A stretch of DNA of 64,000 bases from Octopus sinensis (Eukaryota): assembly GCF_006345805.1 (NCBI RefSeq), contig NC_043000.1:56358001-56422000 (forward strand), read 5' to 3'. The first letter of the stretch is position 1; every line of letters starts with the position of its first letter. Below, piece after piece: positions 57,793-60,155 of this stretch. The notes beneath the pieces were generated by a model. That model did no database searches and was not told the origin of the DNA. It worked only from the letters and a program-made list of their open reading frames with translations. The translations under genes were made by a program, and so were the position numbers.

Positions 57793-58510
57793 GATATATA
57801 TATATATAATGGCGGTGCCCCAGCATGGCCACAGCTCATTAGCTGAAACTGGAAAAATCAAAATCATATATATATATATATATATCTATATATATATATA
57901 TATAAGAATGAATTTTTATATATAATGAACGTGAAATACAGGAAGGGACGAACACGGAACACAGACAAATCATTCGAAGCCTTCAATCTTCAGTCAGATA
58001 CCGAATCATCATAGCAAAGTTAGCTGTTCAATTCTGATATTGCTCCAACTCGGCCAGCCCCAGAAAAAAAAAACTAAGCTGTAAGCATTAGATTTCTTGG
58101 TAGAAGACAGGAATGTGAACGCACAAGACGGATGTGAATAACAGAGCGAAAACGAAATTGAAAACAGTATAATGAATAAACAAAATATATATAACGGTGG
58201 TTATCATACGACTTTAGACCAAATGAGACAAAACAACAACAACATAGCAGCTATATATATATATATAAAATTAATTAAGGGTAGAAATTGATATTTATCA
58301 ATTAAGACCAGTGGTCTAGCATATTAAAAAAGAATCCGAAGATTAAAATATTTATATATACCAATTAAGGACTGAACACGAAAAGTGGACAGTCAACATG
58401 CTAGATATAGACGTCAAATCGCCATTCACCACAAAAGATTATGTTCTCAGATCAAATCAACACAAAACCATAGCAATAAACAAGTGAAAAATATACGAAA
58501 TAAAATAATT

Positions 58511-58578
58511 ACCCATGTACTAAATTAGTTTCAGCTGTTATTTTCCGCAAGGAAAACTGCAGCCATCATCAGCATGGT
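58511..58578 (-). ncRNA. Type I hammerhead ribozyme (minus-strand copy)
   Basis: Reverse complement reads ACCATG-CTGATGA-TGGCTG-CAG-TTTTCC-TTGC-GGAAAA-TAA-CAGCT-GAAAC-TAATTTA-GTA^CATGGGT. Core, stems I/II/III and a GUA cleavage triplet are all present. Confidence 0.8.
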
Positions 58579-58871
58579 CCGTTATAAATGTAATTTGCTG
58601 GACTAGATGCAAACACGATACCGAAATATCGCGTGCATGGAGTTCAGCCTATTACATTTGAATATATCTTTCAAATGCCTTTACTTTGGCGCGTTGAAAC
58701 CCGAGAAAACTAGCCTGCAGCTAATAATTAGCAGCAGTCTAGTTTTCTCGGGTTCCAACGCGCCAAAGTAGAGGCATTTGAAAGATATATTCACATGTAA
58801 TAGGCTGAACTCCATGCACGCGATATTTCGGTATCGTGTTTGCATCTAGTCCAGCAATTACATTATAACGG

Positions 58872-58938
58872 ACCATGCTGATGATGGCTGCAGTTTTCCT
58901 TACGGAAATAACAGCTGAAACTAATTTAGTACATGGGT
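58872..58938 (+). ncRNA. Type I hammerhead ribozyme, copy 1
   Basis: CTGATGA 58878-58884 and GAAAC 58917-58921. Stem II is GGCTG/CAGCT. Stem III is ACTA/TAGT. GUA cleavage falls after 58931. Stem I is CCATG/CATGG. Confidence 0.8.
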
Positions 58939-59376
58939 AATTATTTTATTTCGTATATTTTTCACTTGTTTATTGCTATGGTTTTGTGTTGAGTTTGATC
59001 TGAGAACAATAATCTTTTGTGGTGAATGGCGATTTGACGTCTATATCTAGCATGTTGACTGTCCACTTTTCGTGTTCAGTCCTTAATTGGTAATATAAAT
59101 ATTTTAATCTTCGGATTCTTTTTTAATATGCTAGACCACTGGTCTTAATTGATAAATATCAATTTCTACCCTTAATTAATTTTATATAAATAAATATGTT
59201 CTCTAACCGATAATTAACTGCTGCTAATTATTAGCTGCAGTCTAGTTTTCTCGGGTTCCAACGCACCAAAGTAGAGGCATTTGAAAGATATATTCAAATG
59301 TAATAGGCTGAACTCCATGCACGCGATATTTCGGTATCGTGTTTGCATCTAGTCCAGCAAATTACATTTATAACGG

Positions 59377-59443
59377 ACCATGCTGATGATGGCTGCAGTT
59401 TTCCTTGCGGAAAATAACAGCTGAAACTAATTAGTACATGGGT
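59377..59443 (+). ncRNA. Type I hammerhead ribozyme, copy 2
   Basis: CTGATGA 59383-59389 and GAAAC 59423-59427. Stem III is the perfect palindrome ACTAATTAGT. Predicted cleavage after 59436. Confidence 0.8.
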
Positions 59444-59882
59444 AATTATTTTATTTCGTATATTTTTCACTTGTTTATTGCTATGGTTTTGTGTTGAGTT
59501 TGATCTGAGAACATAATCTTTTGTGGTGAATGGCGATTTGACGTCTATATCTAGCATGTTGACTGTCCACTTTTCATGTTCAGTCCTTAATTGGTATATA
59601 TAAATATTTTAATCTTCGGATTCTTTTTTAATATGCTAGACCACTGGTCTTAATTGATAAATATCAATTTCTACCCTTAATTAATTTTATATAAATAAAT
59701 ATGTTCTCTAACCGATAAATTAACTGCTGCTAATTATTAGCTGCAGTCTAGTTTTCTCGGGTTCCAACGTGCCAAAGTAGAGGCATTTGAAAGATATATT
59801 CAAATGTAATAGGCTGAACTCCATGCATGCGATATTTCGGTATCGTGTTTGCATCTAGTCCAGCAAATTACATTTATAACGG

Positions 59883-59950
59883 ACCATGCTGATGATGGCT
59901 GCAGTTTTCCTTGCGGAAAATAACAGCTGAAACTAATTTAGTACATGGGT
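59883..59950 (+). ncRNA. Type I hammerhead ribozyme, copy 3
   Basis: CTGATGA 59889-59895, GAAAC 59929-59933 and GTA 59941-59943, with the same stems as the other copies. Confidence 0.8.
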
Positions 59951-60101
59951 AATTATTTTATTTCGTATATTTTTCACTTGTTTATTGCTATGGTTTTGTG
60001 TTGAGTTTGATCAGAGAACATAATCTTTTGTGGTGAATGGCGATTTGACGTCTATATCTAGCATGTTGACTGTCCACTTTTCGTGTTCAGTCCTTAATTG
60101 G

Positions 60102-60155
<54 letters not shown>

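What the first reader, a model, noticed from the sequence alone, without database searches (positions are those of the whole stretch)
58262..60105. Array of four intact hammerhead ribozymes in a ~505-bp repeat: a candidate retrozyme-like / Penelope pLTR system able to make circular RNA
Seen: a ~505-bp non-coding unit repeated three times on + and once on -. Each copy has the hammerhead core (CUGAUGA, GAAAC, GUA cleavage) and pairable stems I-III. Predicted + strand cleavage sites at 58931, 59436 and 59943 would release monomers of 505 and 507 nt. Known: type I hammerheads mark Penelope-like pseudo-LTRs and metazoan non-LTR retrozymes. Their self-cleaved monomers carry 5'-OH and 2',3'-cyclic phosphate ends that RtcB-type ligases can circularise. 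Inference: a young non-autonomous ribozyme element, probably mobilised by a Penelope RT, possibly yielding a ~506-nt circRNA. The unit begins with ATAAATAAATATGTTCTCTAA (INKYVL*), which could be the last codons of a PLE ORF. One oddity is an extra U between A9 and stem II.
Basis: partly seen in the sequence, partly recalled or inferred. Interest (0 to 1): 0.88.

Follow-up and report, generated by a model that had tools for sequence, protein, structure and literature searches.

The report
Octopus hammerhead-ribozyme tandem repeat (retrozyme-like)
An octopus genome segment holds four young copies of a 505-bp non-coding repeat, each carrying a Penelope-type hammerhead self-cleaving RNA motif; it is a new example of a known kind of mobile element (animal retrozymes), with cleavage and circular RNA still untested.

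Summary
About 58258-60110 there is one inverted copy and 2.8 direct copies of a ~505-bp unit, 97-99% identical. All four carry the hammerhead core, and cleavage after 58931, 59436 and 59943 would release 505- and 507-nt monomers. No Rfam hammerhead model matches, even on 91 nt at E<=10. A descriptor scan hits only these four sites; 6 of 4000 shuffled windows do as well. Two motifs cofold into a double hammerhead with a 10-bp helix III. The unit is 33% GC and non-coding, and folds as a circle far better than shuffles (z -4.9, -6.6). All 21 variable sites are private to one copy. The inverted copy meets the direct array head-to-head at the unit's own hairpin, and both ends lie in (TA)n, as in PLE insertions. 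No PLE coding sequence is in the window, the "INKYVL*" idea fails, and no other copy could be retrieved. Verdict: a PLE-derived non-autonomous retrozyme-type element in an octopus, a new member of a known kind. Cleavage, transcription and circularisation are untested.

The parts
58252..58267 (.). Left (TA)8 microsatellite; the array end merges into it
   Evidence: Pure (TA)>=5 runs cover only 3.9% of the window.
58253..58726 (-). Copy A: inverted unit, head-to-head with the direct array. It covers unit columns 17-483.
   Evidence: Inverted repeats I1-I10; alignment A1; 4 private changes outside the end columns that merge into (TA)n.
58513..58577 (-). Hammerhead motif of copy A (C3 at 58572, H17 at 58518)
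58704..58749 (.). Palindromic junction centred at 58726/58727, built on the unit's own hairpin (CUGCUGCUAAU-U-AUUAGCUGCAG in complete units)
   Evidence: (I4). Sub-threshold miRNA-hairpin hits here are a by-product of the palindrome.
58727..59212 (+). Copy B: direct unit, 5'-truncated at the hairpin
   Evidence: 8 private changes
58873..58936 (+). Hammerhead motif of copy B; predicted cleavage after A58931
   Evidence: Its private changes lie in the distal loop and stem of helix II only.
59213..59718 (+). Copy C: the only complete unit (506 bp)
59378..59441 (+). Hammerhead motif of copy C. Helix I 59378-82 / 59437-41; C3-A9 59383-89; bulged U 59390; helix II 59391-95 / 59418-22 with distal hairpin 59396-59417; G12-A14 59423-25; helix III 59426-35 (ACUAAUUAGU, a perfect palindrome); A17 at 59436.
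59719..60114 (+). Copy D: direct unit, 3'-truncated where the unit's internal TATATA meets the right (TA)n
59884..59948 (+). Hammerhead motif of copy D; predicted cleavage after A59943
58932..59436 (+). Predicted excised monomer 1 (505 nt)
   Evidence: Circular MFE -135.6 kcal/mol, z -6.6 against 100 dinucleotide shuffles.
59437..59943 (+). Predicted excised monomer 2 (507 nt)
   Evidence: Circular MFE -128.8 kcal/mol, z -4.9; the minus polarity gives -111.0.
60102..60125 (.). Right (TA)12 microsatellite, followed by (GA)16

Best explanation
This is a non-autonomous, non-coding retroelement of the animal (non-LTR) retrozyme type. It descends from the hammerhead-bearing terminal repeat of a Penelope-like element and sits in an octopus genome. 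Shown: a ~505-bp AT-rich unit carries one type I hammerhead motif of the PLE flavour per copy. Shown: the four copies differ only by private mutations, are joined head-to-head and head-to-tail, and end in (TA)n on both sides. Inferred mechanism: read-through transcription of the direct copies gives an oligomeric RNA. Helix III is too weak (3-4 bp) for a single motif, whose core is instead sequestered by CUGAU/AUUAG pairing. Two neighbouring motifs therefore pair through their palindromic helix III into a double hammerhead. That structure cuts after GUA at 58931, 59436 and 59943, releasing 505- and 507-nt monomers with 5'-OH and 2',3'-cyclic phosphate ends. An RtcB-type tRNA ligase would close them into compact circular RNAs in which the monomeric ribozyme stays inactive. 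A PLE reverse transcriptase supplied in trans would copy a circular or multimeric template and insert a multimeric cDNA into a (TA)n site. A strand or template switch at the RNA's own hairpin would produce the inverted copy. On this reading the locus is the product of one such event, roughly a few million years old.
For: Core and helices are present in all four copies, and nowhere else in 128 kb. The chance rate at the observed quality is 0.0015 per window. Independent features are each uncommon: a helix II distal hairpin of -6.1 kcal/mol or better occurs in 0.6-1.7% of 22-mers, a self-complementary loop III in ~7.5%, and other long-period tandem repeats cover 8.8% of the window. The PLE-type signature (bulged base 5' of helix II, large helix II, 4-5-bp helix I, small palindromic helix III, dimeric action) is published (PMC4209133). 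The homodimer cofold MFE is exactly the double hammerhead: -48.6 against 2 x -21.4 kcal/mol for copy C, and -46.3 against -38.0 for the consensus type. For the real neighbours B+C and C+D it lies within 0.2 kcal/mol of the MFE and 4.4 kcal/mol below the separate monomers. The unit is 33% GC with at most 36 stop-free codons on the ribozyme strand. The circular monomers are highly structured, z -4.9 and -6.6. All 21 variable columns are singletons, which points to simultaneous origin. PLE insertions typically show partial tandems, an inverted 5'-truncated head-to-head copy and a microsatellite target, (TA)n for Naiads (PMC8557442). PLEs exist in octopus genomes, with 31 Penelope-like families in one table of the O. 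vulgaris annotation (PMC13282606). The window is from an octopus. Retrozyme properties, RtcB circularisation and PLE origin are published (PMC7229834; preprint 10.64898/2026.07.22.740005).
Against: No Rfam hammerhead model matches, even on 91 nt at E<=10. Helix II closes with G10.1-U11.1 instead of the near-invariant G-C (that conservation is from my own knowledge), so catalysis may be weak. PLE min-hammerheads already cleave poorly in vitro (PMC4209133). The four copies are too similar to give any covariation, and the ribozyme holds a proportionate share of the changes (3 of 21), so there is no sign of selection. No second locus, transcript or relative could be retrieved. No PLE coding remnant lies in the window. 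(TA)n is common in this genome and the unit has its own internal TATATA at both array ends, so the target-site argument is weak. Extrapolated to a ~2.8 Gb genome, the bare descriptor would give tens of chance hits, so the case rests on the added features, which I chose after seeing the motif.
Confidence: 0.7

Rival explanations
1. An evolutionary relic. It is a genuine PLE- or retrozyme-derived hammerhead repeat, but this family or locus is catalytically dead or silent, so no cleavage or circular RNA occurs. The array is a fossil insertion.
For: The G10.1-U11.1 wobble and bulged U weaken the base of helix II. PLE min-hammerheads show only low in vitro activity (PMC4209133). The ribozyme shows no excess conservation over the rest of the unit. 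No transcripts or other copies were found. PLE expansion in O. vulgaris is dated as old, ~56 My (PMC13282606).
Against: The copies are young, with 0.6-1.6% private change each. All 11 core positions are intact in all four copies. The double-hammerhead fold is energetically favoured. The axolotl HHR_Amex2 motif has a U-U mismatch at the base of helix II and still cleaves as a dimer (PMC7229834).
Confidence: 0.3
2. An ordinary local tandem and inverted duplication (satellite-like DNA) that contains a hammerhead look-alike by chance. It has no ribozyme ancestry.
For: No Rfam hammerhead match. Apart from this array, 8.8% of the window is long-period tandem repeat, so such arrays are common here. 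The descriptor's chance rate, scaled to a whole genome, is tens of hits. There is no comparative support.
Against: The chance rate is 0.0015 per window before counting the helix II hairpin (0.6-1.7%), the palindromic loop III (~7.5%) and the tandem context (8.8%). The product is well below one per genome. The departures from the canonical motif are exactly those published for PLE hammerheads. The monomer is far more structured than shuffles. The head-to-head plus tandem architecture in (TA)n is PLE-like.
Confidence: 0.1
3. Remnant of a full Penelope-like element: these are pLTR copies whose RT/GIY-YIG ORF was deleted or lies elsewhere, and not a dedicated non-autonomous family.
For: The hammerhead is of the PLE type and the insertion architecture is PLE-like. 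The 2026 preprint finds retrozymes and pLTRs to be sister sequences.
Against: Units follow each other seamlessly every 505-507 bp, leaving no room for an ORF. There is no RT/EN similarity by Pfam or tblastn in 64 kb.
Confidence: 0.1
4. Assembly artefact: the palindrome (fold-back chimeric reads) or the copy number of the tandem array does not exist in the animal.
For: A near-perfect palindromic junction at 58726/58727 and (TA)n at both ends are typical places for misassembly. The PLE literature notes that such structures trouble assemblies (PMC8557442).
Against: Arm A differs from arm B by 8 substitutions and 6 indel columns, and from C and D by 7 substitutions each. A fold-back artefact would give mirror-identical arms. 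Each copy has its own private variants, and the junction uses a hairpin that is native to the unit.
Confidence: 0.05

Closest known systems
Metazoan non-LTR retrozymes (Cervera & de la Pena 2020, PMC7229834; newt/axolotl satellite 2, mussel and coral repeats)
   Same: Head-to-tail repeats of a few hundred bp, one type I hammerhead per unit, GC below 50%, no ORF/LTR/PBS/PPT, and a compact predicted circular RNA. As in the axolotl, a weak helix III implies dimeric cleavage, and the base of helix II is imperfect like HHR_Amex2.
   Different: The unit is 505-507 bp, above the 170-400 nt reported in 2020 though within the 51-972 bp of the 2026 preprint. The ribozyme is not the canonical type with a 4-bp helix II and loop1-loop2 contacts; it is the PLE flavour with a 12-bp interrupted helix II. 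Only 2.8 direct copies are present, plus an inverted one. Expression and circularity are unknown, and no cephalopod example turned up in the papers searched.
Hammerheads of Penelope-like elements (min-HHR and D. virilis-type variants; Cervera & de la Pena 2014, PMC4209133)
   Same: Unpaired base at the 5' end of helix II, enlarged helix II, 4-5-bp helix I without a defined loop 1, small palindromic helix III, predicted dimeric action, and motifs also found in opposite strands a few hundred bp apart.
   Different: It is not in a pLTR flanking an RT/GIY-YIG ORF, and there is no PLE coding sequence within 64 kb. Helix III is present (3-4 bp) and not absent. Helix II is longer than the 6-8 bp described and closes with G-U.
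PLE insertion architecture (Craig et al. 2021, PMC8557442)
   Same: Partial tandem copies, an inverted 5'-truncated copy head-to-head with the upstream copy, insertion in a microsatellite ((TA)n for Naiads), and target-site duplications that cannot be discerned.
   Different: The inserted unit is 0.5 kb and non-coding, against 2.5-4.4 kb coding elements. No 30-40-bp 'tail' was recognised. Naiads, the (TA)n-preferring clade reported in Octopus, lack canonical hammerheads.
Plant LTR retrozymes and hammerhead viroid-like circular RNAs
   Same: The same logic: hammerhead self-cleavage of an oligomeric transcript, then ligase-mediated circularisation into a compact non-coding circular RNA.
   Different: Those carry type III hammerheads. 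Plant retrozymes also have LTRs, a PBS, a PPT and 4-bp target-site duplications. Here the motif is type I on one polarity only, with no ribozyme on the other strand.

Membership tests
Hammerhead ribozyme, type I | Conserved core: C3 U4 G5 A6 N7 G8 A9, G12 A13 A14, A15.1-U16.1, H17 (not G) | tested here: met
   CUGAUGA ... GAAAC ... GUA|C is identical in all four copies.
Hammerhead ribozyme, type I | Three helices around the core, with helices II and III closed by loops and helix I open | tested here: met
   Helix I 5 bp (CCAUG/CAUGG), helix II 5 bp + 2x2 internal loop + 7 bp + UUGC, helix III 3-4 bp. Helices I and II appear in the unconstrained MFE.
Hammerhead ribozyme, type I | G10.1-C11.1 pair directly following A9 | tested here: not met
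   One unpaired U follows A9, and the closing pair is a G-U wobble. The unpaired base is a known PLE-type variant; the wobble is not documented in the papers I read.
Hammerhead ribozyme, type I | Match to the curated covariance models (Rfam Hammerhead_1, _3, _II, HH9, HH10) | tested here: not met
   No hit at gathering score, at E<=10 on 2151 nt or at E<=10 on 91 nt. The likely cause is the 22-nt helix II extension plus the bulge.
Hammerhead ribozyme, type I | Site-specific self-cleavage | not testable with these tools
   Needs in vitro transcription of monomer and dimer constructs.
PLE-type hammerhead (Cervera & de la Pena 2014) | [quoted passage not shown] | tested here: met
   U at 58885, 59390 and 59896 (+) and at 58565 (-); criterion from PMC4209133.
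PLE-type hammerhead (Cervera & de la Pena 2014) | Enlarged helix II (6-8 bp) and short helix I (4-5 bp) with no defined loop 1 | tested here: met
   Helix II has 12 bp in two segments and helix I has 5 bp.
PLE-type hammerhead (Cervera & de la Pena 2014) | Absent or small palindromic helix III that allows an active dimer | tested here: met
   ACUAAUUAGU is a perfect palindrome, and the dimer MFE is the double hammerhead.
PLE-type hammerhead (Cervera & de la Pena 2014) | Located in the pLTRs flanking an RT + GIY-YIG ORF | tested here: not met
   No RT/EN by Pfam or by tblastn with the Poseidon_Ac protein (best E 2.3). Units are contiguous.
Metazoan non-LTR retrozyme (Cervera & de la Pena 2020) | [quoted passage not shown] | tested here: met
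   Spacing is 503-507 bp over 2.8 direct copies, all with the motif. That exceeds the 150-450 bp of 2020 but falls within the 51-972 bp of the 2026 preprint.
Metazoan non-LTR retrozyme (Cervera & de la Pena 2020) | GC below 50%, non-coding, no LTR/PBS/PPT | tested here: met
   GC 33%. At most 36 stop-free codons on the + strand and 104 on the - strand, with no Pfam family. PBS and PPT were not searched specifically.
Metazoan non-LTR retrozyme (Cervera & de la Pena 2020) | Monomer predicted to fold into a stable, highly self-paired circle | tested here: met
   Circular MFE -128.8 and -135.6 kcal/mol, z -4.9 and -6.6, 63-65% of bases paired. The fold is branched, not rod-like.
Metazoan non-LTR retrozyme (Cervera & de la Pena 2020) | Dispersed multi-copy family in the genome | not testable with these tools
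   No octopus genome is in the searchable DNA collections. There is no other copy in the window. Exact-ORF look-ups, a protein search and a metagenome pattern scan found nothing relevant.
Metazoan non-LTR retrozyme (Cervera & de la Pena 2020) | Expressed as linear and circular RNA of unit length | not testable with these tools
   Needs RNA-seq, northern blots or RNase R.
Metazoan non-LTR retrozyme (Cervera & de la Pena 2020) | Co-occurrence with autonomous PLEs in the same genome | not tested
   Literature only: Penelope-like families are annotated in O. vulgaris and expanded in octopuses (PMC13282606, PMC8967140). None lies in this window.
PLE-style insertion (Craig et al. 2021) | Partial tandem plus an inverted 5'-truncated copy head-to-head | tested here: met
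   Copy A (-) meets copy B (+) at 58726/58727, and both are truncated at the same hairpin.
PLE-style insertion (Craig et al. 2021) | Microsatellite target and 30-40-bp tail | tested here: inconclusive
   Both ends lie in pure (TA)n, which covers 3.9% of the window. The unit's own TATATA sits at both ends, and no tail or target-site duplication can be recognised.

The most novel reading that the evidence does not exclude
The locus is a fossil of a single retrotransposition event. A PLE-type reverse transcriptase copied a circular or oligomeric 505-nt hammerhead RNA for about three rounds, then switched strands at the RNA's own hairpin to make the head-to-head inverted copy, all within a (TA)n target. 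That would be direct genomic evidence for the so far hypothetical rolling-circle mobilisation of animal retrozymes. The ribozyme itself would represent a helix-II-extended PLE-type hammerhead subclass that all Rfam hammerhead models miss. It would also be the first retrozyme family described in cephalopods. Read-through across the 470-bp inverted arms would give long dsRNA, a possible substrate for RNA editing or small-RNA silencing.
Probability: 0.3. Interest if true: 0.55.

Novelty: new member of a known kind. Interest (0 to 1): 0.4.

Why it matters
If active, this adds cephalopods to the animals that make small circular RNAs through self-cleaving ribozymes. The element is also intermediate in form: its tandem layout is retrozyme-like but its hammerhead is of the Penelope type. 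[quoted passage not shown] The singleton-only variant pattern, with the inversion point at the unit's own hairpin, gives a concrete and testable picture of how such multimeric insertions form. It also shows a practical blind spot: the curated Rfam hammerhead models miss this class entirely, so covariance-model scans will undercount PLE-type hammerheads.

Tried and rejected
1. Rfam at three stringencies found no hammerhead. The only sizeable hits were miRNA-precursor models on the palindromic junction at 58676-58776, below gathering score. I read them as a by-product of a perfect hairpin.

2. A metagenome DNA pattern scan for the core plus the base of helix II gave one match, L001. It lies in a 62% GC bacterial coding region with no similarity to the unit, so I rejected it as chance.

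3. Four exact-product look-ups with ORFs from the window (three short ORFs of the unit and the LINE-tail ORF) found nothing. A large protein search with the unit's 104-aa stop-free frame also found nothing.

4. Pfam on stop-free segments of the flanks, the unit and the rest of the window gave only a sub-threshold PHD finger in a LINE tail 37 kb away. Two attempts to submit raw frames failed because they contain stops.

5. tblastn of a Poseidon PLE protein, taken from the supplement of PMC11167929, against the window gave noise only.

6. I hoped the 1.24-kb duplicated right flank would provide a paralogous empty site. The duplication starts at the (TA)n itself and does not include the left flank, so it gives no empty site.

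7. The supplement of PMC8557442 with octopus PLE consensus sequences is not held.

8. I ran no further search on a lizard PLE query. Its 120 listed hits would be mostly vertebrate, and octopus PLEs would probably not appear.

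Full report
**1. What is there**

The region about 58258-60110 holds four copies of one ~505-bp unit.
- Copy A (58253-58726) lies on the minus strand.
- Copies B (58727-59212), C (59213-59718) and D (59719-60114) follow head-to-tail on the plus strand, 503-507 bp apart.
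- C is the only complete unit. A and B both start at the same internal point and meet head-to-head at 58726/58727. D stops early.
- Pairwise identity is 96.8-98.2%. No other copy exists in the 64-kb window.
- The closest named relatives of a LINE fragment at 21023-21736 are Octopus bimaculoides and O. vulgaris proteins at 72-95% identity, so the window is octopus DNA.

**2. The hammerhead motif**

Every copy reads 5'-CCAUG CUGAUGA U GGCUG[22 nt]CAGCU GAA ACUAAU(U)UAGU A | CAUGG-3'.

In standard numbering, all invariant positions are present:
- C3-A9
- G12-A14
- the A15.1-U16.1 pair
- H17 = A

The helices are:
- **Helix I:** 5 bp and open, which makes this a type I motif.
- **Helix II:** 5 bp, a 2x2 internal loop, 7 bp and a UUGC loop.
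- **Helix III:** 3-4 bp.

Cleavage would fall after 58931, 59436 and 59943 on the plus strand, and after 58518 on the minus-strand copy.

**3. Is it more than chance?**

No Rfam hammerhead model reports it: not at gathering score, not at E<=10 on 2.1 kb, and not at E<=10 on the 91-nt motif alone. This is a real negative and is listed as such in the membership test.

My own descriptor finds only these four sites in both strands of the window. In 4000 dinucleotide-preserving shuffles it fires 0.028 times per window, and 6 times in all at the observed helix lengths. That is 0.0015 per window. Scaled to a genome of about 2.8 Gb it still means tens of chance hits, so the motif alone does not settle the matter.

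Features outside the descriptor are each uncommon:
- A 22-nt helix II extension folding at -6.1 kcal/mol or better occurs in 0.6-1.7% of 22-mers.
- A self-complementary loop III occurs in about 7.5%.
- Other long-period tandem repeats cover 8.8% of the window.

The product is far below one chance occurrence per genome. The caveat is that I chose these features after seeing the motif, although each is a published trait of such ribozymes.

**4. The 'oddity' is a signature**

Cervera and de la Pena (2014, PMC4209133) describe the hammerheads of Penelope-like elements as having:
- a larger than usual helix II;
[quoted passage not shown] - a small palindromic helix III;
- action as dimers.

The octopus motif has all of these. 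The remaining departure is that helix II closes with G10.1-U11.1 instead of G-C. The axolotl HHR_Amex2 motif, with a U-U mismatch at the same place, still cleaves efficiently as a dimer (PMC7229834). So this weakens the case for activity without excluding it.

**5. Dimeric geometry**

Folded alone, the motif forms helices I and II, but its core CUGAU pairs with AUUAG of helix III, an inactive fold. The same sequestration appears in the predicted circular fold of monomer 58932-59436.

Two motifs cofolded give, as the unconstrained minimum, the textbook double hammerhead. It has an intermolecular 10-bp helix III, helix I formed in trans and open cores.
- For copy C the dimer is -48.6 kcal/mol against 2 x -21.4 for separate monomers.
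- For the consensus type it is -46.3 against -38.0.
- For the real neighbours B+C and C+D it lies within 0.2 kcal/mol of the minimum and 4.4 kcal/mol below the separately folded monomers.

This is the mode established for newt and axolotl repeats and proposed for PLE hammerheads.

**6. The unit as a whole**

- It is 33% GC.
- It has at most 36 stop-free codons on the ribozyme strand, and no Pfam family on either strand.
- As a circle the monomers fold to -135.6 and -128.8 kcal/mol, z -6.6 and -4.9 against shuffles, with 63-65% of bases paired. The opposite polarity is less stable at -111.0.
- These are the properties listed for animal non-LTR retrozymes (PMC7229834).
- The length exceeds the 170-400 nt of that paper but lies inside the 51-972 bp range of a 2026 preprint.

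**7. History of the locus**

All 21 variable alignment columns are private to one copy, and none is shared by two. The four copies, the inverted one included, therefore diverged from one sequence at essentially the same time.

Three changes fall in the ribozyme: two in the distal part of helix II and one in loop III. None touches the core or a base pair next to it. That share is proportionate, so it shows neither selection nor decay.

The inversion point coincides with a hairpin native to the unit. Both outer ends run into pure (TA)n, which covers 3.9% of the window.

Craig et al. (2021, PMC8557442) describe PLE insertions as partial tandems with an inverted 5'-truncated copy head-to-head upstream. 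They also report a microsatellite target bias, (TA)n for the Naiad clade, which occurs in Octopus.

The fit is good, but the (TA)n point is weak. The unit has its own TATATA at both ends, and no target-site duplication or tail can be seen.

Each copy carries 0.6-1.6% private change. With the published octopus calibration of JC 0.09 for about 25 My, that suggests an age of a few million years. This is a rough inference.

**8. What is not there**

- No RT or GIY-YIG remnant was found by Pfam in the flanks, the unit or the rest of the window.
- tblastn with a Poseidon PLE protein also found none; the best E was 2.3.
- So this is not a pLTR next to its ORF. Any reverse transcriptase must act in trans.
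- PLEs are annotated in octopus genomes, but I could not fetch one for comparison.

**9. Most likely mechanism and its status**

Shown here:
- the motif and the repeat structure;
- the predicted folds;
- the singleton-only variant pattern;
- the PLE-like architecture.

Inferred, and not testable with these tools:
- transcription;
- double-hammerhead cleavage to 505- and 507-nt RNAs with 5'-OH and 2',3'-cyclic phosphate ends;
- RtcB-type circularisation;
- reverse transcription by a PLE enzyme in trans;
- one-step insertion of a multimeric cDNA with a strand switch at the hairpin.

I put 0.7 on 'PLE-derived retrozyme-type element'. The chance that these particular copies cleave efficiently is clearly lower.

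Rivals, which are not all mutually exclusive with the main reading:
- inactive relic (0.3);
- chance look-alike in an ordinary duplication (0.1);
- remnant of a full PLE (0.1);
- assembly artefact (0.05), which the 7-8 substitutions between the inverted arm and each direct copy argue against.

**10. Novelty and score**

Hammerhead tandem repeats are widespread in animals, and their link to PLEs is published, so this is a new member of a known kind. I found no report of a cephalopod example.

Three points are mildly new:
- the mix of retrozyme layout with a PLE-type, helix-II-extended ribozyme;
- its invisibility to Rfam;
- the apparent one-step origin of the array.

Interest: 0.4.

Noticed in passing
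window 60105-62580: A separate 1.24-kb tandem duplication (two copies, 95-100% identical). Each copy begins with (TA)n(GA)n TTTAAGAATGG, and the hammerhead array sits immediately upstream of the first copy. TRF missed it because the period exceeds 500.
   Followed up: partly
window 21023-21736 (+): The 3' part of a LINE ORF with a PHD-finger-like motif (Pfam PHD E 8.6e-4, below the curated cut-off). Its closest named relatives are Octopus bimaculoides and O. vulgaris proteins, which identifies the genome as octopus.
   Followed up: partly
window 4579, 7815, 20404, 41405, 42581, 57653, 57815: A dispersed SINE-like core (GTGCCCCAGCATGGCCGCAG, up to 3 mismatches) on both strands. Two copies bracket the (TA)n at 57709-57808, just left of the array.
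   Followed up: no
window 971-1445, 28302-29002, 45666-46565, 62533-63591: Four other long-period tandem repeats (234, 342, 419 and 469 bp, about 2 copies each). None has a hammerhead descriptor hit. Together with the 1.24-kb duplication they make 8.8% of the window.
   Followed up: partly
window 58676-58776: The palindromic junction of the array scores as a plant or nematode miRNA precursor (MIR2950 57.5 bits against gathering 76; mir-237 40.3 against 80). This is a by-product of a near-perfect hairpin. Read-through transcription would, however, give about 470 bp of dsRNA.
   Followed up: partly
L001 3104-3144 (contig LFEF01011298.1): The only metagenome match to the core plus helix II pattern lies at the junction of two bacterial coding regions (62% GC). 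It is unrelated to the unit and counts as a chance match.
   Followed up: yes
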